From assembly GCF_033153115.1 (NCBI RefSeq), contig NW_026889779.1, positions 13,330,001 through 13,394,000 of the forward strand: DNA of 64,000 nucleotides. Direction: 5' to 3'. This document shows positions 25,971 to 48,757 of this stretch, one piece after another (position 1 is the first letter of the stretch; each line of letters opens with the position of its first letter). The notes below the pieces were generated by a model. It was not told the origin of the DNA. It saw only the letters and a program-made list of their open reading frames with translations, and made no database searches. The DNA comes from Saccostrea echinata (taxonomy: Eukaryota). A program made the translations under genes and the position numbers.

Positions 25971-28900
25971 CTATTCCATTGTTTGTACCACTTGTGTCGT
26001 TGTAAGGATGGTCGGCTTATGATGATCTAACCTCTTTGTGACCCCAGGACGCAGTGATTCTCGCACTCTCTGAAGTTTTCTCTCTGCACACAGAGTAACG
26101 AGTCTGTTAAGCTCACCCGCTGAGTATCCTAATAACATTTTCAAGTCACACACAAATTTGTACACAAATCTTTTTCCATGCACCTGGAAAACAAGATAAA
26201 AGCATTTTCATCAAATCATATATTTATCAAACAAGGACATATTTCACAATGACAGTTTTATAGGAGGTGTCCATCTTAGATTACTAAATTTAATTAGAAG
26301 ACATCGTGATTTGGCTTTGGAAAAGTTAATAAGACTGCTTAGTTCACACCAAGACATTTGTTGTTGACATTTTGAGTTATTATCTCTAGTCTATGTCAAT
26401 GTTCAGCCTTTACCGAATATTAGTTTCTGCAATTTTCTGTGAGACTGTCATTTAGAGATCATACTCATGTCACATATCTCAGAGAGAAAACCAGAAGTCT
26501 CTGATGAGACTGTAGCTCTACTGGTCTGTACGTATAACAAAGGAAAAGTAGCACTTGGATTTGAAACTTTGCAACATGCAACAATAAATAGAATGATGTA
26601 TCTTAATGTAATCTACTTCTATGCCAAGTTATATTAAAATCAGAAGAAAACTGCTGGAGGAGTTTCACAGAAATTTCTATTTTTAGTAACCATGGCAACA
26701 CCCTTCATCAAAATCAAAAACCGATGCACTAAATTATGTATCTTAGAGTAGTCTACTTGTGTGCCAAGTTATATTGAAATCAGACTAAAACTGTTGAAGG
26801 AGTAGTGTTTTAAAGGAATTTTACAGAAATTTCTATTTTTAGTAACCATGGCAACACCCTTCATCAAAATCAAAAACCGATGCACTAAATTATGTATCTT
26901 AGCTTAGTCTACTTGTGTGCCAAGTTATATTGAAATCAGACCAAAACTGTAGGAGGAGTAGCGTTTTAAAGGAATTTCACAGAAATTTCTATTTTTAGTA
27001 ACCATGGCAACACCCTTCATCAAAATCAAAAACCGATGCACTAAATTATGTATCTTAGTGTAGTCTACTTGTGTGCCAAGTTATATTGAAATCAGACTAA
27101 AACTGTAGGAGGAGTAGCGTTTTAAAGGAATTTGACAGAAATTTCTATTTTTAGTAACCATGGCAACACCATTCATAATATTCAAAAACCGATGCACTGA
27201 ATTATGTATCTTAGTGTAGTCTACTTGTGTGCCAAGTTATATTGAAATCAGACTAAAACTGTAGGAGGAGTAGCGTTTTAAAGGAATTTGACAGAAATTT
27301 CTATTTTTAGTAACCATGGCAACACCCTTCATCAAAATCAAAAACCGATGCACTAAATTATGTATCTTAGCTTAGTCTACTTGTGTGCCAAGTTATATTG
27401 AAATCAGACCAAAACTGTAAGAGGAGTAGCGTTTTAAAGGAATTTCACAGAAATTTCTATTTTTAGTAACCATGGCAACACAGTTCATCGAAATCAAAAA
27501 CCGATGCACTGAATTATGTATCTTAGTATAGTCTACTTGTGTGCCAAGTTATATTGAAATAAGACTAAAACTGTAGGAGGAGTAGGGTTTTAAAAGAATT
27601 TGACAGAAATTTCTATTTTTAGTAACCATGGCAACACCGTTCATTGAAATCAAAAACCGATGCACTAAATTATGTATCTTAGTGTAGTCTACTTGTGTGC
27701 CAAGTTATATTGAAATCAGACCAAAACTGTAGGAGGAGTAGCGTTTTGAAAAATTGTTTACAGATAGACGGACAGCTAGACAGACAGACAGACAGACAGA
27801 CGGACGCCGGACACCTTACTATCGCATAAGCTCTTCTGGTCTCTGACCAGCAGAGCTAAAAAGAAACATTAACAGTTACCATCATAGGACATTTAAAATG
27901 TAAGTGCAGATCAAATGACATTTTGACATATTGTCCTTGCAGTAAATTTTTACCACAGTTTTTCACATAACTTCTGATTAACAGAGTAATAGTATTAAAG
28001 CTAACCTTTGCGATCATATCTCCATCATAGTAGTATCTCAGTGCCCTGCTGAGTTTTTCATAGTTCATTGTAGGTTTGTTTTTCCTTTGGCCCCACATTT
28101 GAGCCACCATTTCAGGATTGTTCAGTTTAAATTCGCCTTCATCCCCGATCCACTGTATCACTTCTCTACAGTCTTTATCTGTTAACAAGTCCAGCAAAAA
28201 CTGCCACAGCTGAATCTGGCCATTGTTTCCTATGTCAAATATTATAAACATATAATGACATATATAACTGAACATTTATGCGAGTCATACTTGTATCCAA
28301 TTTTGAAAATTCATCATGGCAATTTAAGAATAAGCAAATATTCATTAAGGTTTTTTTCTATTTATAGTGTACAAATTTTCTTACCCGTTCGATTTCCTGG
28401 AGACAACCTTTCATCCCCCGTTATTCTAGGAGATCGAGGACGATTCTGACGATACTGCTTCACCCTTCCTGGAGGTTTTATAAAAGAATTCTTTAAGAAT
28501 TGCTTATCATTAATTTTTAACATAGTTTTTGAAAAAGAGCATTTTCATGCGATAGTCATATAATGTTACAATAAAAGAGAGCAGAATAAATTTGTGGGTA
28601 TCTTGTTTTCATTTGTAATGATCTGCCACAAAGTTGTGTAAAATTGCTTTATATCAGAAACTAACAAATTCTCTTCTCATTTAATGTGCAAATTTTTGTG
28701 CAGTAGAGTTTTGATTTTGGCATCTAATAAATGCCTCAAAAATCAAAACTGTCAAAAAGACTTTATTTGTTATATTAAAGTTTTTGATAACAAATCTTCA
28801 GACTTTCCCTGGCAATCTCTTAGATGTAAATTAGTACAATCAACACCTATCCATTTTAAAGAACCTGGTTGACATGACAAAATAATATATGAGCTACAAT

Positions 28901-38681: not shown

Positions 38682-38880
38682 TTATAAACGACAAATGATT
38701 AATTCTCAATCTGTTTCTATGTATTTGTTCTATTAATTTACGGTCCAGTTAGATATCTGTAATTGAAAGTTTGATGTTTAGAAATGACATTTTTGCACAT
38801 GGTAGCAATTTCTAATCCTGAACATTTGCATCTCTTTTTTGTCTCATGATATCATTATCAATGTCATTTACTCATACCGC

Positions 38881-39033
38881 AGGTGCTTCCCTTGAAAGTT
38901 TGTAGTCCTGATGAAATGATGTCTACAAATGTCTACCCCTCTATACTATAAAATCAAAGTTGAATTTAAAGTATAGATGGGTAGACCAATGTAGAATTAT
39001 CATTTCGTCATCTAAACTTACACGGGAATGCCT
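38881..39033. repeat. Imperfect ~150-bp palindrome
   Basis: The left arm AGGTGCTTCCC..GATGAAATGAT..GTCTACCCCTCTATACT..TCAA pairs with the right arm TTGA..AGTATAGATGGGTAGAC..ATCATTTCGTC..GGGAATGCCT. Confidence 0.75.
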
Positions 39034-40561
39034 ATGCTCATAGGTGTTATCAACTTTATGGTTATAGATCTTAGGATTGTATTCTTTGAATTTGTTATGC
39101 TTAGCTCTACCTAATTTCAGTCTTGTAAATTAATGTCATACATATTTCCCATGTTCATGCAACTTTCTTATCCTTAAGTTAATAACTTAATTGGCTGGTC
39201 AGTATGAAAGTTGGCAGAATTGTCAAAGATTAGATGTGTGTGTTTGAGTTTGTATGTGAGTCAATGTACAAAATTTTACAAAAATTCAGTTTGTTTCTAA
39301 GATGCATTTGTGAAATTAGTAACAGTTTGAACTTATAATAAATTCTGAACTTTAAAACCATTTTACCTACCATTGCTTTATTTAGCTACTTGAAGTTAAA
39401 GTAGCTTTATTTTGTTTTCATTTCGATTAAAAAATTGTTGGGCTAATTAGCAATGTTTGGGCTCATAATTTTTTATTGATCAGTAGCCCCTGGGCTAGTG
39501 AGTTTTCCAGGAAAATTTCAACCTGTTTTAGAGGGGACAGGTCTTGATTTGTATTGGAATGAAATTGTAGTAATTTACATAGATAATAAAAATCTGGATA
39601 GCTTATAATAAATATACCACAGCAATTTATGTTCATATTGATTCCAAACATTGATTTCAAACTTCAGATTAAAAACAGTTGGACCATAGTTAGTTACTCA
39701 GGTGAAGTGTTGCGGCCCATGGTCCTCTTGTTGATTTGAATAAAGTTTGGTACACAATTAGATTACATTAGGATACTGTAAAATTATAGAATTTTATATA
39801 TAAGTTTTTGATCTAATTGAATGCTGTTGCCATGTCTACCATTAAGAGAATTTTTGTAAAATTCTTTCAATAAACTCTCCAATAGTTTGGTCCAATTTCA
39901 GTAAAACTTGATACAGTCAGTCAGTGGGAAAAAAACAAAGATGTTCAACAACTATTTCGTAAAAAGGCTTTTGAAATTGGGCATCCAAACTCAAAACTAA
40001 AGTGTTCACTGTAGTATAGTAAGGTGTATAAAAGATGTTTTTGTGGAAGTATTTAATTTAGGCAATGATTTAAGAAATAAAATGTCAGCTGTATGATGAC
40101 AAGTAGTTGGATAAAATGATTTTCAATCTTAAAATGTGTTAGATTCTTGTTATTACATTTTTGACTTAATTTAATGGTTTTTTTCCCATTTTGGTTTTTC
40201 CATTCACTGTCTTATGCCATATAATGTAATCAGTATTACACTGCTAAATTAGTACTTAATGAAAATAAATATAGACCAATTAATATTCTTTTTTTTTTTA
40301 AAAAAAGAAAAAAAAAAAGCAGAATATGTCATTTATTTTATTAATTAGATTACCCCAAGTATTTAATAGGAATTTACCTTAATTGATCTTCTTGGTTACA
40401 AATGACACATGTTATGTGTTACAGTGTACATAAATTATGACATTGTGAAGCACTGGAATACAAGGGATTTATCCAATGAATATTATCCCCTGTACATTAC
40501 TGTAAATCTAGATGTCAAATCAGCAAGTTTTAATTTTTTTGGTATACTTTTTAAGGTCAAG

Positions 40562-42196
40562 ATGTTTGGGAGACATTTGGCCATCACAGGGCCACGCCAG
40601 TTGAGGAACATTGCAGCTAGAAATCTTCATCTGTCTGGGGCTTCTTACCAAGCCACTGATCCTATCCAGCAATTATTTGTTACTAAGATTAGGGAGTATG
40701 CCAACAAGAAGAAACAGCTCAAGTAAGAATGAACAATTATCCTTGATTAATTTATTTGCAAATATTAAATTTGGGGATAGATATTGCACATTTTTAACAA
40801 TATCAAAGACTTCTTGGTGAATGTTTATTAGAGGTGCTGAAGTGTTACTAGTTATCTGGGGGTTAAGTCCATATTGAAGATACCTGATCAATTAGACTAA
40901 TACTTGCTACCAATAAATCTTAATTACTAGTGATTTTCAGGTTCAAAAATGCACAGTGTCAATAATACTGTAAATTTGTACCTCAGTTTAAGGTACTCTC
41001 TCACTTTGTTATGCTGCAATTACATTGTTTAGTGCTTTTCTTAAATCACATCATTTAGAAAAGAAAGCATGCTGAAAATCACAATAAAACAAATATACAT
41101 TTTGTAGTTGAGTCTTGTGGGATAACTAAATACAAAGACATAATATACATCTATTGAATGTGATATGACACTGTTAAAGTATAATAGTATATGACAGGAC
41201 AGCTGTGCTCTAATATTATTATTACTTTTCTCTGTTTCAGGCCAGGAGAGGTGTTGGTGGATGCTTCACCTGAAGTTATACAGAACTACAATGACAGTTT
41301 AAACAGAATCTATAAAATGCACAACCTAACAAAGGCCAATGCAACTGCTGTCCCTGACCTCAAATTTCAAGGTAAAATCATGTGTCAGAAGTTGGCAGCC
41401 TGCAATGAACAAATTAATCCTGTAAGGGAAGTAACTCTTGTAAATAAATAAATTAAACTTTTATGATGATAACCATCATCCAATGATCCATGCTCTCTTA
41501 TAGACGTGCATTGTTGAGTCCTACTCTTTTGAAAACATTTTATTGATTGTTCTGTAATTGAAATGACGATCGATTACTGCATAGTTAACTCATAAAGCTT
41601 CTTGGCAATATAAGAAAATATTTTATGTATATGATACGGTATACTTAAAAAAGTGTTTTATAAGGATATTAATTGTAAATAAATTTTTCAAATTAGTTTT
41701 AACTGCATTGGAAAAACTGAAGATTTTTAACAGAGGATTTGGAGATTTTTTAACTGCAAACAAAAATGAAAAAAAGCTAGTCTACATGTACATGTCTATG
41801 GCTATTAATTGTCAGTCTGGATGGTATGCATTCTAGTATATTTGCAAAATTTAGTAACTGAAAAATGTGAAGTAACTATGTGGAGAAGGAGAGAATTTTC
41901 CATTAAATTCATTTCTCTCAGAAAAAAGATTGAGATTGTTTCACAAATGCACAAACATAATGACTCATTTCAAGCCCATGTCTGTCAGATTTCATGAATT
42001 GTTCATTTCAGATAAAGCAGTCCAAGTTATTGAGCTTGATAGTGTAAGTATGGAAAATTTCACTCCAGAATTTCCGGAGGATAAGATAGATCTTTCTGCA
42101 GAGAACCCCAAGGTCGGTGACCTTCACATGCGAGTGTTAGGTTTTGATCCGGAGAGAAATGCTCCAGATGACGTTCCCTCAAAGATTGCAGCGTGA
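40562..42196 (+). CDS. ATP5PF: Mitochondrial ATP synthase coupling factor 6 (peripheral stalk subunit F6), 158 aa
   Basis: Exons 40562-40722, 41241-41371, 42012-42196, phase-consistent. Arg-rich presequence, then the signature DPIQQLFVTKIREY...LVDASPE...PDLKF. Confidence 0.9.
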
Positions 42197-43818
42197 ACTA
42201 AAGAGCATGTATAGAAAAACTTTAACATTTAATTCATATACAGTGACTTGATTTGTGCTGAAATAAGACTTTAATCAGTTGTTGTAAAGTATGAAGCTGT
42301 TGGTGTGACAGATGTTGGTTAGGAACATAGAGTAAAAATAAATCATCTGAACAGTTCTAATCTCTTGCTTTTTATGAAATGCTACTACCGAATTTACCTA
42401 TTACTGCAAGATTTCAATGTGAATATTCACATCACTGGATTAACTGATGTAAGGGGATGAACAGGTAGAGACAACTGAAAGAAATATTGCAAGTACTTCT
42501 CAACAGTATAGATGTTCTATAATGGAATGTATAATATAGACTGGCAATGACCAGTAAGCGATACTGCTGAGGCTAGCAAAGGTTTAGGATATTTTCATGG
42601 AAAGATGGGACTTTCACTCTCTGCTTATAGTTAGATGGCATTAGCCTCACCTATTTATATTTAGAAAATTCTGAATTTGCCTATAATTAAGTCTGTGGAA
42701 TTTCTAATGTAAAAGCTTTGATGACAGAATCACCATTTGACTGTGTGGGTTAAGACTTTTGGAAATCTATATTATCAATGGAAGTGGCATATTTCATTAG
42801 ATGTACTGGTCAAATGAGCCTTGGCATTTGCAAGGTGTTTTGTTTGTTGTTTAAAGTGCTATTAAATCTGTCATAAGCATTGTAAACTTGTTGGAAGACT
42901 ACATCAAGATGCACAATTCTATATAATGTGTATGTGGAATTTTTAGTGAGACACAAATAGCGATTTATCCCCCAAAATTGGTATATATTTTTAGCAAGAA
43001 GTAATTTTAGCAATTTTATAATGTCAATAAAGATAGCTATAACAACCGATACAGGATAAATTGTTAGCGATATTCAATTTGAGCGATCTCAAAACCCTCG
43101 CTAATAATGCCAAACTTGAATCCTTGCTAAAAATTCTGCTTATACAGTACATATGTATTGGTTTTTGATTTCATAGTGTTGCCATGTTTATTATAAATAA
43201 CATAGGGGAAAAAAATCTGTGAAATACTTTAAATTCTTTTAGCTGAAGTCTTAAAGATTACTGGTTTTACAAGCAATATTTATTCACATGGATATTTGCC
43301 AGGTTTTACTATATTTTAAAAATTATGTTTTTGCAGAATTTAAAAAAAAAAGGGGGTTGGGTCTTGGATATCCAATGACAGGGCAATAGACTAAGTCATT
43401 TAAGTTTTCTGTTGGCATTATATGATTTATATCCAAAATAAGCAAAAATGATATACTAGTTTATCTCAAGCTTTTGTCTTTCAAAAAGCTCTCAAGCTTT
43501 TGTCTTTCAAAAAGCTGTCAACATATATTTATCAGAGGAAGTAAAATTCATGGCATATAATTTTCATTAGGATGTATCTTCATGTGTTTATCCCCTGTGG
43601 AAAACATCTTTGATTTCATTCAACATTGTTTCTTAGTGAAGAGAATAATGTACAAGTGACCAAAAAAAAAATAAGAAGTCATTTGAGATGATCACTTAGC
43701 ATTTAATTGGAACACTGTGAATTCAGTAATTAAATATTGATCTGCAATTTACATATAATGAAAGTTGATACAATGGTATTTAGTCTCCACTGCACTTCCT
43801 GTTCCTTGAACTTTCTCA

Positions 43819-46284
43819 CTATGTCTGCACAGGTAGTCTTATGATCAGTGATGAATTGTTTTTGTTAAATTTCGCTGATGCATTAGAATCATCAATGAGG
43901 TAGGGAAAAGAAACATTCAGATGATACAGATCTTCCACTGTCAAGTCAATGTCATCCTGAGGAAGATAAATGAGGGTATTTCAACTTATTAAAAAACACA
44001 TAACAAATAACACATGTTTTTTTTAAATTGTATATTTAAATATGGCCATTTGAAATAGGTCAAGATTGACATTTAAACAATTTTACAGTAATTCTTTTGA
44101 TTTATTTAAAAAAGGAATCTTTTTTTTAAAATATATTTTCTATCACATATGTCAAGATTTTATATACATTGAAGATGGGGAAAAATAAAGGGAATGTGCT
44201 GAGTAGTAGACTTTTCTTTCTTCTTACCTCAGAAATATCAAGCTCACATTCTGACACTTTGTTCACTCCAGGTAATTTTATGGTTAGAATCAGCTCCTCT
44301 AAGTCTTTTTCTTTGAATTTCTCCTCCATATTGTACTCTGGGACTTTAACCTCCGATACTGGTTTCTGATTGGTTGAATTCATTTCCTGAATAAGATTCT
44401 GTTTTGTTGGCTTTTCTTTGCTTAGTCCTGGTAGCTGAATATTTGGAGTATTATTACTCTTTGCATTGTCCTCTGTAGATAAATTTGCTAATTTGTTCAA
44501 TAGAGAGTCTTTTGCACCACAACCTTGTAATCCAAAAGTTTTTTCCAGCTCTGAGAGCTGTTCATCAAACTCATCATCTTCATTCTGTTTCTGACTCTGG
44601 AATGCTTTTTGTAGACTTAGGATGTTGCCCTTAAATTTAGTTGTAGATGGTAAAATTGAAAAACTCCTTGATAGAGTGATTTTATGTTGATTGTGTACAT
44701 AGTCTATGGCTAAGTTTATAAGAGCAGTTCGATCCGATGAATTTTTACAGTCCATCCCGAATTCCTCCAAAATCTTTGGATTAAATGCAACTCCAGAGTA
44801 GGAAAAGTCTCCTGAAAATAATATTTTAAAAAAAAATCTTAGTAGATTATGTCTATGCACTTTGTGCATCCAAAAATGAAAAGCACTGTACAATATAACT
44901 TTTTTTGGTGAGTCAAAAGTTCGCGGTTTGAGTAAAAATGTAGGTTCATGGGGATTTGATTTTGTGGTTAAATAAATGTACTGCTGACACTGTAATTTGA
45001 CAATTTTACATTTTATGGAGGACATAAATTCCTGGGTCTCTTAATGTCACGAAAGCAATGCAAAGCAAACCCCACCAAAATTATAGTAATTACTAAATAT
45101 TTAGAGATTTGTGTAAATCTGTTTTATAATGTTACACATTTTTTTTTATACCATTCTCGTCCTTGTCCTGTAAGACTTTAGTTCCAGTAACAGGTATAGC
45201 ATCCTCAGGAGTCTTTGGCTCTGGGATTTTATTCCAAGAACAAAAATTAATGAAATATCTTCTCTTTGTACTCTGTAAAAACGAATGTGTATTTTTAACC
45301 TCAAATTAACCTATTCTGGAAAAAAGATAATTCAATAAACCAGGAATAAATGGATTAATTTTTCTTCCTAACTTACTGTGACCATTGTCATGACACACAT
45401 ATGGGGCTCTGCTGGTTTCATGTACTCCTTCCCTTCTGTCATATGTTTGTCAATAAAGTTTCTGTAAGCCTTTGGGATAAAATTTTGTCAATGTAATATA
45501 TGTATAAAATACATCTAGATTAGCACTATGTTTATGGTCAAAATAATTCCCAGCATTTTTGTCACTTTTTAGTATAAGTTTATATACCAGGAATCACTCA
45601 TTACACATGATTTTTTTTGTTAGAAAATAGCAGTATTAAGCAATGCATTTACCATGTTTACTCAAACAAAATTTTTTTTGTGTGTGCATATGTTTACTGT
45701 TTTATCCTCCTTATGGGAAACACTGATATTAACTACTTACTATTCACAAGTACTTTTATATGGAATGAATTTAAGTTGGGGCAGTTTATGCTTTATAAAC
45801 CGTGAAGTGGTTTATAAAAAAGCATAGGCCTAAACCGTTCCAACCCACTTTATACCGTATAAATTGGGTAGCTATTAATTTCATTGCCTTTACCAGGTAA
45901 TTTAATTTTCATTCACGTGTAACGTCAGGCAGATCGATACGTTTTTAACGCAAGTCATTGTGATGTAGGCAATCCAATTTATACAATATGAAGTAATTTT
46001 TTTATCCAATCAAATACTGCAATATAACTAGAATTAAATTATATCAAGATCAACTGGCATAAGATTACTCATACAATTCTTCTCAAAAACTTTAATGTTT
46101 GCTGTTGGATTATTTTGCAAAATTACATGTAAATAATTTTAAGATGTGACTTGCAGTATAGAATATGTATGGCTTGTATTAGATGTACCTGTGGATTATT
46201 TTCTGCCATTTCATCTAACATTGTCCATATATTTTGAGCCTGCTTCATCATGGAATCCCTATCTACACCATCAGGAACAGCCAT
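43819..46284 (-). CDS. PIH1D2: PIH1 domain-containing protein 2, ~343 aa
   Basis: Exons 46284-46189, 45469-45377, 45272-45152, 44811-44228, 43956-43819. N-terminal IWTMLDEMAENNPQAYRNFI..EGKE...PEPHMC, then FINFCSWNKIPEP and VAFNP. C-terminal CS domain IKLPGVNKVSECELDISED...ASAKFNK. Confidence 0.9.
45761..46050. repeat. Dispersed repeat with palindromic end; second copy inverted at ~63590-63958
   Basis: Shared blocks GGAATGAATTTAA, TTTATAAACC..GGTTTATAAAAAAGC, TTCCAACCCA, TTGGGTAGCTATTAA and GATACGTTTTT.ACG.AAGTCATTGTGA. Confidence 0.7.
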
Positions 46285-48757
46285 CGTTTTAATGAATGTG
46301 ATGCCAGAGATGAAAATATTAATATTGTCCCTTCTGAAACATTTAAAATAAGAGTATAATATATTCATTTCTACAAACCCATTCAAGACATAGACTTATG
46401 TTAAGTATTATACCATCATTCTATATTTTCAGAACAGTCCCCTTAAAGGAAACTTTAGCACATTGATTTTTCATTAACGTCAGTCTATTTCAGGTCAATA
46501 CTTACATGTAGAACAATATAAGTTCAATGTCCGACAAAAAACTAAATTCACATAGTTTTCATCAAGACTCCCACCCTCAGTTACTAAATGTGTTAATTGC
46601 TGATTCAAATTTGATTATTTAGTACTTATTTATATATTACACTGTAAATAATTTATATTTCCTTTGTTAATTGATATATCATATACAAAAAGCATGCATT
46701 TCAGAGACGTAAATAACAAATAAACATATAATCTCAAGTCATTTAAGTACTTTTTGTGCTATCATAGATGTCAATCATGTCAGACGACAAAAACTTTCTG
46801 GGTTCTTTATCCATCCTCCCCCGTTTGTTTGATTTTTTTCCCCAGACAACGATTGTTTGATCTTGTCCCTAAAATGCTTCACACAATGTCACGAGTCATG
46901 TACCCTATTCAGCTATTTTCATATCTCATTGAATAACTGTCTATAATTTGCGTATGTCTGATAGGATTCCAACACATTTTGGTTATTACCTGAGATCTAT
47001 ACGCCAAATATGTCTTATTTGAAAATCAACATGAAAACTTCGTGTCTCTTCGCGTCCATAACGATAAATGGTAATTTTTGTATGCCGAACCCGATTCTCA
47101 TAAATAACCAAAAATAAAGAAATGAAAAGATAACCAAAAATAAAGAAATGAAAATAAATATAAATAAATAAATATTTTATTATTTATGAAAAAAAATCAA
47201 TTAAAAAATGAATAAATAAATAAAATAAAATGAAATCGAATTGAATTAAATCAAATTAAAAATAAATTAAGAAAAACAGCCAGAAAAGATACATAAAAAT
47301 GATAGCATCGATCTACAAAACATCTTAACTGTACACACAGTTTTTTTGAAATACTGTGTACATTTTCTTAAATGGTCTATATTGGTACCCTGTTTTAATT
47401 GTTACCAACAAATTTAATGAGTTTTAATACCAGTTTCAATATGTGAATGAAGGATATTTTGAACGAGTTCTTTCCTGTATAGAAAATAACAGCCATCCCC
47501 ACCCCCGAGAAAAAAATACCATCAGACTAGCGACCTTAAACAGCATTGTTGAAAAAATATGTACAGAGGTGTCATGTATATAATGGTACATGTATTTTCA
47601 AAACTTACATTATTTCCAAGCGGCAAAGAATGTCACTGTGCGGAATACCATGTGTGCTTGTAATGAAAAAGCTGAAAGATTTTAAGTAGATCTTATACTT
47701 AGTTTTTAAAACAAAGTCTATGTAAAAAGAAATGGGTTAAAAAGCAGGCATATCTGCCCTTTCAAATAATACCAATTTATGTCTTGCATTATATCGTTTT
47801 ATCCCCCCTCCTCATCCGACTAAAACAATATTAGATTTAACATATATCAATATAGAATTACTTTTAATTTTTTAAGAGTGACCAGCGAGAACTGTTGAAA
47901 TATATTTATAATAATCTTCAATGGAATACATGTACTTCAGTGACCCTAATTAATTAATCTTGTACGCAGAGTTATACTTGTATAGTCCGCCAGATTTACC
48001 CAATTTCTCAAGTTTAATCAGTCTACTTGGCTAAATTCCCTATTATATGAATTAATTAGGCCTCTCCACTGTTAATTTTTTAATTCTCATTACTTTATAA
48101 ATATTAAAACAATTGAAGGTTACTTAAAGAATTAAAGTACAGACGAAATGTCACATAATCGTTTACGATACATGTAGTTTCATTGATTTGTAAATAAACA
48201 ATCAATTGCACGTGATTGTTCTACATTTATTGACCCAGTTACTGAAAAAAAAAGTTTCTAAAATTAAAAAAAAAAACATGTCAGTTGAGGTCGGTGTAAA
48301 CATATTAAACTTTTAAAGGGAGCATAATCCACTTAAAAAGAATAATATTTAACCAGGAGTTATTTCACGGCAAGAGAATATATGAATTCTTGTTCTTTCA
48401 TTAGAACTTCGTTCTACTCGGACTGCTTGTCTTGCCATTTTAAACAAAAAGAAAAGATAAGATTATGTGTTTTTTTTGTTTGCATTCTGTGTGAAATCAA
48501 TAGGTAATGCATTTAAATAACGTGTCAGTTGTTTTTGTCATTTGGATGGATAATTCACAATCGCTAGGGAAGCGGACACTTTCATTGTGACATACCGCAG
48601 TAAAAGTAACGGAACCTAACAACCACAGAGCAGGTATATTTGTCTCTTTCTCTCTTGAATGAGTAAATTACGTCTTAGTTAATTCTATAGGAATTATACG
48701 CACGACATTTTCCTGGATTTTTTTGCCCTCAATTTTTATTTATTTTTTATAGTTGGA

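What the first reader, a model, noticed from the sequence alone, without database searches (positions are those of the whole stretch)
25971..42196. GABPA and ATP5PF are head-to-head, as in mammals: candidate ancient bilaterian gene pair
Seen: GABPA (-) and ATP5PF (+) are adjacent and divergent, with no other gene recognisable between them. Known: human and mouse GABPA and ATP5PF (ATP5J/CF6) share a bidirectional, GABP-regulated promoter, and GABP (NRF-2) controls nuclear-encoded respiratory genes. Inference: the same pair in a mollusc means the linkage between this regulator and one of its OXPHOS targets may predate the protostome-deuterostome split and be kept by shared regulation.
Basis: partly seen in the sequence, partly recalled or inferred. 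Interest (0 to 1): 0.78.

Follow-up and report, generated by a model that had tools for sequence, protein, structure and literature searches.

The report
Oyster GABPA and ATP5PF head-to-head
In this oyster genome the gene for the transcription factor GABP-alpha and the gene for ATP synthase subunit F6 sit back to back as they do in mammals, and an unrelated invertebrate contig shows the same arrangement, so the pairing is probably very old, though a shared promoter is not shown here.

Summary
On the minus strand lie exons for the GABP-alpha (OST), Pointed and ETS domains. On the plus strand lie the exons of ATP synthase coupling factor 6. NCBI's Saccostrea echinata F6 protein matches the first coding exon at 100%. 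Both families hit only this locus in the 923-Mb assembly.

Spliced contigs from public runs place non-coding first exons at 34896 to at least 35072 (minus strand, taken to be GABPA) and at about 37006-37026 (F6). The two 5' ends are therefore about 1.93 kb apart. No ORF with a domain, RNA family or unique transcript lies between them.

The N gap (35235-35371) lies between the genes, inside a 1.3-kb repeat block. It touches no exon. Only about 0.6 kb of unique, CpG-rich DNA separates the starts.

One of 20 metagenomic F6 loci, L022, from an unidentified, distant invertebrate, has GABP-alpha and F6 head-to-head 1.1 kb apart on one ungapped contig.

Ancient ancestry is likely. Retention by shared regulation is untested. 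The scan had not noted this pair before.

The parts
25971..26195 (-). GABPA last coding exon: end of the ETS domain, C-terminal tail and stop codon at 25971-25973
   Evidence: ORF list. tblastn of scorpion, millipede, leech and sea-star GABPA gives 26195-26043, 57-69% identity.
28003..28230 (-). GABPA ETS-domain exon
   Evidence: Pfam Ets 1.4e-30. 93% identity to millipede and 91% to scorpion GABPA.
29247..29465 (-). GABPA Pointed (SAM_PNT) exon
   Evidence: Pfam SAM_PNT 1.8e-21. tblastn 54-56% identity.
30140..30292 (-). GABPA linker exon between the OST and PNT domains
   Evidence: tblastn of scorpion and millipede GABPA.
30660..30912 (-). GABPA OST-domain exons, second half (30808-30912 and 30660-30704)
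   Evidence: PF11620 positions 40-72 at G000:C30:13360805-13360903. tblastn.
31660..31803 (-). GABPA OST (GABP-alpha, PF11620) exon, first half
   Evidence: Pfam 9.9e-12. The genome search 3.2e-9. 57% identity to the L022 OST.
31913..32169 (-). GABPA N-terminal acidic coding exon; borders approximate and read by eye
   Evidence: ORF 31910-32197. The frame continues from the ATG exon through an AG acceptor read. No RNA check.
32697..32775 (-). GABPA exon 2 with the start codon (ATG 32757-32755); borders read by eye
   Evidence: Sequence: acceptor AG at 32777-32776 and donor GTAAGT from 32696, both on the minus strand. Not covered by the laid stretch.
34896..35072 (-). Non-coding first exon taken to be GABPA's. 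The 5' ends of three contigs lie at 35012, 35033 and 35072, and the donor GTGAGT starts at 34895.
   Evidence: Contigs of 3830, 3838 and 2009 nt from runs X1, X2 and X5 all stop at 34896 with 0 mismatches (table 8). The rest of each contig lies outside the laid stretch, so assigning them to GABPA is an inference.
34747..34754 (-). The only exact CCGGAAGT (GABP/ETS consensus) in the 64-kb window. It lies in GABPA intron 1, 142 nt from the exon 1 donor.
   Evidence: Script count: 1 in the window. CCGGAA occurs 12 times against 7.35 expected.
35144..36468 (.). Repeat block between the two starts, containing the N gap 35235-35371; CpG-depleted
   Evidence: 35144-35234 has at least 39 other copies at 80-84% identity. 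35433-36468 matches high-copy families, with 11962 first-look candidates of which 40 were scored. Contig depth reaches 59,567. CpG o/e is 0.18-0.81.
36469..37005 (.). Unique, CpG-rich DNA upstream of the F6 start: putative F6 core promoter
   Evidence: CpG o/e 1.39-1.61 against 0.52 for the window. No repeat match.
37006..37026 (+). ATP5PF (F6) non-coding exon 1; donor GT at 37027
   Evidence: Loose letters before 40553 are sequencing adapter plus a 14-mer that is unique in the window at 37010-37023. A run X3 contig starts at 37006 directly after adapter.
40556..40722 (+). F6 exon 2; ATG at 40562
   Evidence: 653-nt X3 contig on 40553-40639. P0001 residues 1-54 at 100%. Pfam F6 4.9e-8.
41241..41371 (+). 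F6 exon 3
   Evidence: P0001 residues 53-99. Pfam F6 positions 58-96. Splice sites read.
42012..42196 (+). F6 exon 4: oyster-specific C-terminal extension and stop codon
   Evidence: P0001 residues 93-158. The extension is absent from the 9 non-oyster F6 sequences of alignment A1.

Best explanation
Shown: the window carries the single-copy oyster orthologues of GABPA (NRF-2 alpha, Ets97D) and ATP5PF (F6) in divergent orientation. Each has a short non-coding first exon. The transcript 5' ends are about 1.93 kb apart and no gene lies between them.

Inferred, fairly strongly: the arrangement is inherited from an early bilaterian ancestor, not assembled twice. The same pair is head-to-head in mammals (published) and in a second, distant invertebrate (L022). 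The outer neighbours differ in all three: a PIH1-like gene here, a Mot1/BTAF1-like gene in L022, and (recalled) JAM2 and APP in human.

Inferred, weaker: the pair is held together because both core promoters depend on one compact, unmethylated, CpG-rich control region that bears ETS and E-box sites. Through these sites GABP would drive F6 and feed back on its own gene, as described for the mouse promoter. A break between the genes would then damage both.

In Saccostrea echinata this region has been split by old repeat insertions (74-89% identity to other copies). That leaves about 0.6 kb of unique DNA in two CpG islands, so here the two promoters may work largely on their own.
For: Domains and orthology. 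Single copy in the assembly.

First exons and splice junctions come from contigs of four runs (2 studies): three contigs share the border 34896, which sits at a minus-strand GT donor. The F6 contig joins 37026 to 40556, and the loose 14-mer that shows this is unique in the window.

No intervening gene. Repeat block around the gap, and unique flanks beyond it. Two CpG islands (o/e 1.0 and 1.4-1.6 against 0.52 for the window).

L022 carries PF11620 at 2.6e-27 on the minus strand and F6 at 4.6e-11 and 5e-7 on the plus strand, 1,125 nt apart. Its only CCGGAAGT and a GGTCACGTG lie in the CpG-rich middle. L022 is not an oyster: its F6 is 42-51% identical to the window's, against 69-76% between the window's F6 and the two other oyster-type F6 proteins; its GC is 0.42 against 0.32; its F6 intron is under 100 nt.

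An APP-like gene lies on the same chromosome-scale contig but 11.4 Mb away, so the wider neighbourhood is scrambled while the pair is intact.

Mammalian pair: Table 3 of PMC3121118; overlapping human UTRs in PMC4165373; titles of Chinenov 2000 and Patton 2006 seen in a reference list. Fly Delg, the homologue of NRF-2 alpha, controls mitochondrial mass and OXPHOS gene expression (PMC2735006, passages).
Against: Only 1 of the 20 metagenomic F6 loci shows GABPA. Seven loci hold 3-10 kb upstream of F6 (L010, L011, L014, L015, L017, L018, L019), and none has an ETS, PNT or OST hit. In L017 a GATA-finger ORF lies upstream of F6, and in L010 a ChaC gene does. Their taxa are unknown. Some may not be animals, but some are probably animals without the pair.

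The taxon of L022 is unknown. It sits in a weak group (85/50) with oyster and sea-star sequences, so it could be another lophotrochozoan and add little phylogenetic breadth.

The start-to-start distance of 1.93 kb exceeds the 1-kb definition, and old repeats have been tolerated between the starts. The CCGGAAGT site lies in an intron, 260-325 nt downstream of the GABPA starts. The 12-mer shared with L022 is reached by 124 of 500 shuffles.

That the 3.8-kb contigs are GABPA mRNA is inferred, because only their last 117-177 nt were laid. The runs are labelled 'RNA?' (a guess), although they do contain a spliced junction. From memory, Ets97D and ATPsynCF6 are not adjacent in Drosophila. Continuity across the gap was not tested with DNA reads.
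Confidence: 0.55

Rival explanations
1. The adjacency is ancestral but kept by inertia alone. Oysters and vertebrates rearrange slowly, some ancestral neighbours survive by chance, and no shared regulation holds this pair together.
For: Repeats 1.3 kb long have settled between the two starts without separating the genes' functions. The two CpG islands are separate. No significant shared promoter motif was found. The loci that held several kb upstream of F6 showed no GABPA, as expected if loss is tolerated. APP stays on the same chromosome, consistent with conserved macrosynteny.
Against: The flanking genes differ in oyster, L022 and human while the pair and its 5'-5' orientation persist. Irimia et al. 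report that conserved ancestral pairs are enriched in the 5'-5' orientation and in co-expression (PMC3514665, passages). The mammalian promoter is experimentally bidirectional and GABP-dependent.
Confidence: 0.28
2. The adjacency arose independently by chance in molluscs, in the L022 organism and in vertebrates.
For: Only three lineages are in hand and one of them is unidentified. With conserved macrosynteny both genes may sit on one ancestral linkage group, which raises the chance of accidental neighbourhood.
Against: My rough estimate, which is an inference and no tool result: with about a thousand genes on a 36-Mb chromosome (3.9% of 923 Mb), immediate neighbourhood has a chance of about 2 in 1000, and the divergent orientation a quarter of that. 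It would have to happen again in L022.
Confidence: 0.1
3. The adjacency is an assembly artefact: the scaffold join at the gap 35235-35371 wrongly brings together two unrelated regions.
For: The gap lies exactly between the two genes. Both flanks are repeats. No contig laid bridges it.
Against: A wrong join would have to recreate by accident the arrangement seen on the ungapped contig L022 and in mammals. Both genes are single-copy. The window lies 13.3 Mb inside a 36-Mb contig.
Confidence: 0.04

Closest known systems
Mammalian GABPA / ATP5PF (ATP5J, coupling factor 6) bidirectional promoter (mouse: Chinenov 2000, Patton 2006; human)
   Same: The two orthologous genes are present in the same 5'-5' orientation. 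F6 has a non-coding first exon with the ATG in exon 2 (for mammals this is recalled). A CpG-rich region with ETS-type sites lies between the genes.
   Different: In human the UTRs overlap (PMC4165373) and the promoter is one short shared segment. Here the starts are about 1.93 kb apart and split by a 1.3-kb repeat block. Only one exact GABP consensus is present, and it lies in GABPA intron 1. No functional data exist for the oyster.
Conserved ancestral microsyntenic pairs (CAMPs) of Irimia et al. 2012, co-regulated 5'-5' class (e.g. HSPE1-HSPD1)
   Same: Non-paralogous neighbours in conserved divergent orientation, with a short intergenic distance and a housekeeping or mitochondrial function.
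   Different: Here one partner is a transcription factor known in mammals to regulate the other.
Metagenomic contig L022 (ERZ1740065 NODE-19250), unidentified invertebrate
   Same: GABP-alpha OST exon on the minus strand and F6 on the plus strand, head-to-head. One CCGGAAGT in the same orientation and one GGTCACGTG between the genes.
   Different: Compact: 1.1 kb between coding ends, F6 intron under 100 nt, no repeat block, and the OST domain in one exon. The downstream neighbour is a Mot1/BTAF1-like gene, not a PIH1-like one.

Membership tests
GABPA / NRF-2 alpha / Ets97D orthologue | N-terminal GABP-alpha (OST) domain, PF11620 | tested here: met
   9.9e-12, 45.4 bits against a cut-off of 26. 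The second half of the domain scores 37.7 bits.
GABPA / NRF-2 alpha / Ets97D orthologue | Pointed domain followed by a C-terminal ETS domain, in that order on one strand | tested here: met
   SAM_PNT 1.8e-21 and Ets 1.4e-30. Exon order is OST > PNT > ETS on the minus strand. The ETS exon is 91-93% identical to named arthropod GABPA.
GABPA / NRF-2 alpha / Ets97D orthologue | Partner GABP-beta present and heterotetramer formed | not tested
   No search for GABPB was made. Collins 2007 found no GABP-beta orthologue beyond zebrafish in HomoloGene (PMC2077898).
ATP5PF / mitochondrial ATP synthase coupling factor 6 | ATP-synt_F6 domain, PF05511 | tested here: met
   Exon 2 scores 33.7 bits against a cut-off of 27.9. 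Exon 3 alone scores 18.7 bits, below the cut-off. NCBI names the matching protein P0001 as F6.
ATP5PF / mitochondrial ATP synthase coupling factor 6 | Expressed, spliced mRNA | tested here: met
   Contigs from 3 runs lie on exon 2 and carry exon 1 letters spliced on. The run type is a guess by the tool ('RNA?').
Bidirectional promoter pair (divergent genes, starts under 1 kb apart) | Divergent orientation with no gene between | tested here: met
Bidirectional promoter pair (divergent genes, starts under 1 kb apart) | Transcription start sites less than 1 kb apart | tested here: not met
   35072 to 37006 leaves 1,933 nt between the ends, including 137 N of estimated length. Without the repeat block about 608 nt remain, but that is a reconstruction and not the present state. 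These are contig ends, not mapped start sites.
Bidirectional promoter pair (divergent genes, starts under 1 kb apart) | Shared cis elements and co-expression | tested here: inconclusive
   There is one CCGGAAGT, in intron 1. CCGGAA occurs 12 times against 7.35 expected, and 10 of 100 shuffles reach 12. The 12-mer shared with L022 is not significant. Contigs cannot give expression levels.
Conserved ancestral microsyntenic pair (Irimia 2012) | Non-paralogous pair linked in at least 4 of 11 major metazoan lineages | tested here: inconclusive
   Seen here in a mollusc (this window) and in one unidentified invertebrate (L022), and in mammals from papers. No named-species survey was possible.

The most novel reading that the evidence does not exclude
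A transcription factor gene and one of its own respiratory-chain targets have kept a common divergent control region since before the protostome-deuterostome split. This would be a regulator-plus-target cassette in which GABP autoregulates and drives F6 through ETS and E-box sites that still sit between the genes in distant phyla. Divergent, GABP-linked gene pairing would then be far older than the vertebrate origin proposed by Collins et al. 2007.
Probability: 0.3. Interest if true: 0.65.

Novelty: new member of a known kind. Interest (0 to 1): 0.5.

Why it matters
Hundreds of ancient head-to-head pairs are known, so the kind is not new. This pair is unusual because one partner, GABP, is the factor most tied to bidirectional promoters in mammals, and the other is one of its validated targets.

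Collins et al. (PMC2077898, discussion passages) argued that conserved divergent pairs and a functional GABP heterodimer arose together in vertebrates. A GABPA-F6 pair in a mollusc and in a second invertebrate would push at least this pairing far deeper. It would also give a concrete locus for testing whether regulator-target linkage is selected.

The oyster case adds a natural experiment: the putative shared region has been split by repeats without separating the genes.

Tried and rejected
I did not try it again.

2. The word search with the F6 exon ORF and with P0001 found only 4 and 12 proteins. With the L022 F6 ORF it found only that ORF itself, so L022 could not be named that way.

4. The big representative search with the L022 OST ORF gave 167 hits. 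I looked up 30 of the 150 listed. Those that carried names were arthropods, a leech and a sea star at 45-64% identity, and the 91-97% identical fragments carry no name. The OST tree (101 rows, 79 columns) leaves L022 in a weak group. I dropped rows at least 90% identical to L022 and rows covering fewer than 58 residues. The oyster entered with one exon only.

5. A scan of the bacterial and archaeal genome contigs for contaminating host DNA found nothing.

6. The sigma-70 promoter and terminator scan does not apply to a eukaryote and was ignored.

7. The turkey GWAS paper (PMC12434253) lists both genes only as positional candidates. It says nothing on adjacency and was not used.

8. Before the reads were laid I read two candidate first exons by eye: a donor near 34571 for GABPA, and 35372-35388 for F6. 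The runs showed no depth in 34640-34839 and only low depth in the 35240-35439 bin, so both were dropped in favour of 34896-35072 and 37006-37026.

9. Extended synteny: the APP_E2 domain lies on the same contig but 11.4 Mb away, so there is no conserved block. MRPL39 and other chr21 neighbours were not tested.

10. Literature searches (also 67): I found no paper on this pair outside vertebrates. Of the 40 papers holding both GABPA and ATP5J, 37 were listed. I read only their titles and abstract starts, and none of these concerns invertebrates. Ets97D plus ATPsynCF6 gave 0 papers. The supplementary tables of Irimia 2012 may list the pair and could not be seen.
Full report
WHAT IS THERE. The window is G000:C30:13330001-13394000 of a 923-Mb assembly. 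On the minus strand, exon-sized ORFs carry the Ets domain (27859-28275, 1.4e-30), the SAM_PNT domain (29232-29456, 1.8e-21) and the GABPA-specific GABP-alpha/OST domain (31651-32058, 9.9e-12). The second half of the OST domain lies at 30808-30912. tblastn with named GABPA/Ets97D proteins of a scorpion, a millipede, a leech and a sea star lays out the exons in the order OST, linker, PNT, ETS, C-terminus. The ETS exon is 91-93% identical to the arthropod proteins.

On the plus strand, ORFs at 40409-40723 and 41191-41448 match ATP-synt_F6. The protein that NCBI names 'ATP synthase-coupling factor 6, mitochondrial-like [Saccostrea echinata]' (P0001, 158 aa) matches the first coding exon at 100%. 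So the window is from that oyster or from its assembly. PF11620 and PF05511 each hit only this locus in the genome.

All searches were made exon by exon or with database proteins.

TRANSCRIPT ENDS. The one run search returned five small runs (two studies) holding 9-14% of the sampled words of 35372-42300, which is what an mRNA would give. I laid four of them on 34640-40639. All are Logan contigs labelled 'RNA?', which is a guess by the tool.

Three contigs (3830, 3838 and 2009 nt; runs X1, X2 and X5) end on 34896-35012, 34896-35033 and 34896-35072 without a mismatch. The common border at 34896 is followed on the minus strand by GTGAGT. This is therefore a first exon of a minus-strand gene, with its 5' end at about 35012-35072. 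The next minus-strand exon that I can read is the GABPA ATG exon (32697-32775, acceptor AG; read by eye). I therefore assign the exon to GABPA. The rest of each contig lay outside the stretch, so this assignment is an inference (I put it near 0.9).

For F6, a 653-nt contig lies on 40553-40639. The letters before 40553 are sequencing adapter followed by a 14-mer that occurs once in the window, at 37010-37023, directly before a GT. A contig in X3 starts at 37006 right after adapter. So F6 has a 21-nt non-coding exon 1 (about 37006-37026), a 3.5-kb intron, and exon 2 from 40556 with the ATG at 40562. The spliced junction shows that the runs contain RNA-derived sequence.

Depth is zero over 38840-39439. 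Elsewhere in the intron and between the genes the depth comes from contigs with 5-10% mismatches or very high depth, which means repeats.

THE SPACE BETWEEN, AND THE GAP. The 5' ends are 1,933 nt apart (35073-37005), counting 137 N. The region 34560-35143 is unique in the genome, while 35144-35234 has at least 39 other copies at 80-84% identity. To the right of the gap, 35433-36468 matches high-copy families, partly arranged as arrays elsewhere. There were 11,962 first-look candidates, of which 40 were scored, at 72-89% identity. A 161-nt internal period is visible.

The gap therefore sits inside an old repeat block of about 1.3 kb. That is an ordinary reason for an assembly break. It touches no exon, so no reading frame is at stake.

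CpG observed/expected is 1.0-1.1 over 34800-35399 and 1.4-1.6 over 36400-36999. It is 0.18-0.81 in the repeat block and 0.52 for the window as a whole. This gives two promoter-type islands, together about 0.6 kb of unique DNA between the starts, split by repeats.

Nothing else is recognisable between the genes. There are only short ORFs (none was put to a family scan). One tRNA-like Rfam match at 29.9 bits lies at 33862-33934, in GABPA intron 1, within the TRIM noted earlier by the scan (s1-820190). ARAGORN finds no tRNA.

I did not look up what the gap holds. I did not test continuity with DNA reads, because the single read-laying run had gone to the RNA question.

IS THE PAIR OLD? I therefore scanned the metagenome collection with an alignment of 12 F6 proteins. 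This gave 20 loci. tblastn with the window's separate exon ORFs found GABPA in exactly one of them, L022 (3,786 nt).

In L022, Pfam gives GABP-alpha at 2.6e-27 on the minus strand (220-504), and F6 at 4.6e-11 and 5e-7 on the plus strand (ATG at 1850). The coding ends are 1,125 nt apart and there is no gap. Downstream of F6 lies the C-terminus of a Mot1/BTAF1-like SNF2 ATPase. Its best PDB matches are residues 1757-1885 of 1,897-aa 'helicase-like' chains, and the name Mot1 is my recollection.

L022 is not an oyster. Its F6 is 42-51% identical to the window's, while the window's F6 is 69-76% identical to the two other oyster-type F6 proteins. Its GC is 0.42 against 0.32, and its F6 intron is under 100 nt.

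It is not a vertebrate or any well-sampled animal either. The 30 hits that I looked up (of the 150 listed from 167) gave named relatives only at 45-64% identity: scorpion, stick insect, millipede, leech, other insects, barnacle, spider and sea star. The 91-97% identical fragments carry no name. A tree of the OST domain puts L022 in a weakly supported group (85/50) with the oyster and sea-star sequences, outside a well-supported chelicerate/myriapod clade. Its phylum remains open.

RESULTS AGAINST. The other 19 of 20 loci show no GABPA. Twelve of them hold less than 3 kb upstream of F6 and say little. Seven hold 3.2-10 kb upstream (L010, L011, L014, L015, L017, L018, L019) and have no ETS, PNT or OST hit even at E<5. 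In L017 a GATA-finger ORF lies upstream on the same strand as F6. In L010 ChaC and THOC2 lie upstream. Several loci (GC 0.28-0.30 or 0.52-0.58, with long intron-free ORFs) look non-animal to me, but none was identified. From memory, not from any call, the fly genes Ets97D and ATPsynCF6 are not neighbours. The pair is thus not universal.

WIDER NEIGHBOURHOOD. An APP_E2 gene lies on the same chromosome-scale contig but 11.4 Mb away, with a twin on C27. In human, from memory, APP is the next gene beyond GABPA. The outer neighbours here are a PIH1-domain gene (43822-45025, minus strand) and, further left, a glutaredoxin-domain ORF. The outer neighbours thus differ in oyster and L022, and by recollection in human, while the pair and its orientation persist. 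My rough estimate for chance is about 2 in 1000 for neighbourhood on a chromosome of roughly a thousand genes, and a quarter of that for the divergent orientation. This is an inference, not a computed result.

REGULATION. The literature held here supports the mammalian case. Gabpa/Atp5j is listed as an experimentally validated GABPA- and SP1-regulated bidirectional pair (PMC3121118, Table 3 passage). Human ATP5J and GABPA have overlapping UTRs on opposite strands (PMC4165373, passages). The titles of Chinenov 2000 and Patton 2006 were seen only in reference lists. In Drosophila, Delg, the homologue of NRF-2 alpha, controls mitochondrial mass, and OXPHOS gene expression falls in the mutant (PMC2735006, passages). 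The regulator-target relation therefore plausibly predates the split.

In the oyster the sequence evidence is thin. The only exact CCGGAAGT of the 64 kb lies at 34747, in GABPA intron 1, 260-325 nt downstream of the GABPA starts and 2.3 kb from the F6 start. CCGGAA occurs 12 times against 7.35 expected, and 10 of 100 shuffles reach that count. Four of the 12 lie in 34749-36782. A GGTCACGTG lies at 35019.

L022 also has its only CCGGAAGT, in the same orientation, and a GGTCACGTG in the CpG-rich centre of its intergenic DNA. However, the 12-mer that the two loci share is reached by 124 of 500 shuffles. By the usual criterion of starts under 1 kb apart, the oyster pair is not a bidirectional promoter today.

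COMPARISON AND NOVELTY. Irimia et al. 2012 (PMC3514665, passages) describe 595 conserved ancestral microsyntenic pairs. These are enriched in the 5'-5' orientation and in co-expression, for example HSPE1-HSPD1. The present pair fits that class. Whether it is already on their list I could not see, because the supplements are closed. Their main text has no 'ATP5' and was not among the papers holding both 'GABPA' and 'microsynteny'.

Across the searches I found no paper on this pair outside vertebrates. Collins et al. 2007 even tie conserved divergent pairs and the GABP heterodimer to vertebrates. The scan itself has notes on two other mollusc-to-human head-to-head pairs in this genome (s1-820222 and s1-813528; neither checked by me), but none on this pair.

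I file this as a new member of a known kind.

VERDICT. Ancestry of the pairing is likely (about 0.8 for common descent, counting both the regulated and the neutral versions). Retention by shared regulation is plausible but untested, and it is weakened by the repeat-split spacer. Interest 0.5.

Noticed in passing
window 42012-42196; alignment A1: Oyster F6 proteins (158-162 aa) carry a C-terminal extension of about 55 residues, encoded by a fourth exon. It is absent from the 9 mosquito and marine-catalogue F6 sequences in the alignment. The L022 F6 also seems to continue into a further acidic exon (about 2383-2489), which I read by eye.
   Followed up: partly
window 26769-27665: Six near-identical 38-aa ORFs spaced 156 nt apart reveal a 156-nt tandem array (minisatellite) inside the GABPA intron between the two ETS-coding exons.
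   Followed up: no
window 33862-33934 (and 34100-34170): tRNA-like sequence: Rfam tRNA at 29.9 bits, just over the cut-off, and no ARAGORN call.
   Followed up: partly
window 37390-38690: Inside F6 intron 1 there is a stretch with inverted-looking ends (read by eye). Many run contigs lie on it with 5-10% mismatches, so it is probably a transcribed MITE-like repeat family.
   Followed up: no
window 35433-35911; G000:C25:11537205-11543702: The repeat right of the gap belongs to a family that forms long tandem arrays elsewhere in the genome. Within the window it shows a 161-nt internal period.
   Followed up: partly
G000:C30:1900198-1900909 and G000:C27:1468631-1469342: Two APP_E2-domain loci have almost identical scores (62.9 and 62.8; 35.8 and 35.8 bits). 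This may be a recent duplicate or an uncollapsed haplotype.
   Followed up: no
window 43822-45025 and 46126-46386 (minus strand): A PIH1-domain gene lies tail-to-tail with F6. PIH1_CS scores 4.3e-9 on 43822-43944, with weak PIH1 and PIH1_CS matches on the 299-aa ORF.
   Followed up: partly
window 15494-15787 (minus strand): ORF with a glutaredoxin domain (3.4e-9).
   Followed up: no
window about 2120-2250: A second run of N (assembly gap) shows up as X runs in the ORF list.
   Followed up: no
L010 8540-9913: An F6-like match in a single segment without an intron (residues 30-98) lies next to ChaC and THOC2 genes on a 36-kb contig of GC 0.49. It may be a retrocopy, or it may come from an intron-poor organism.
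   Followed up: no
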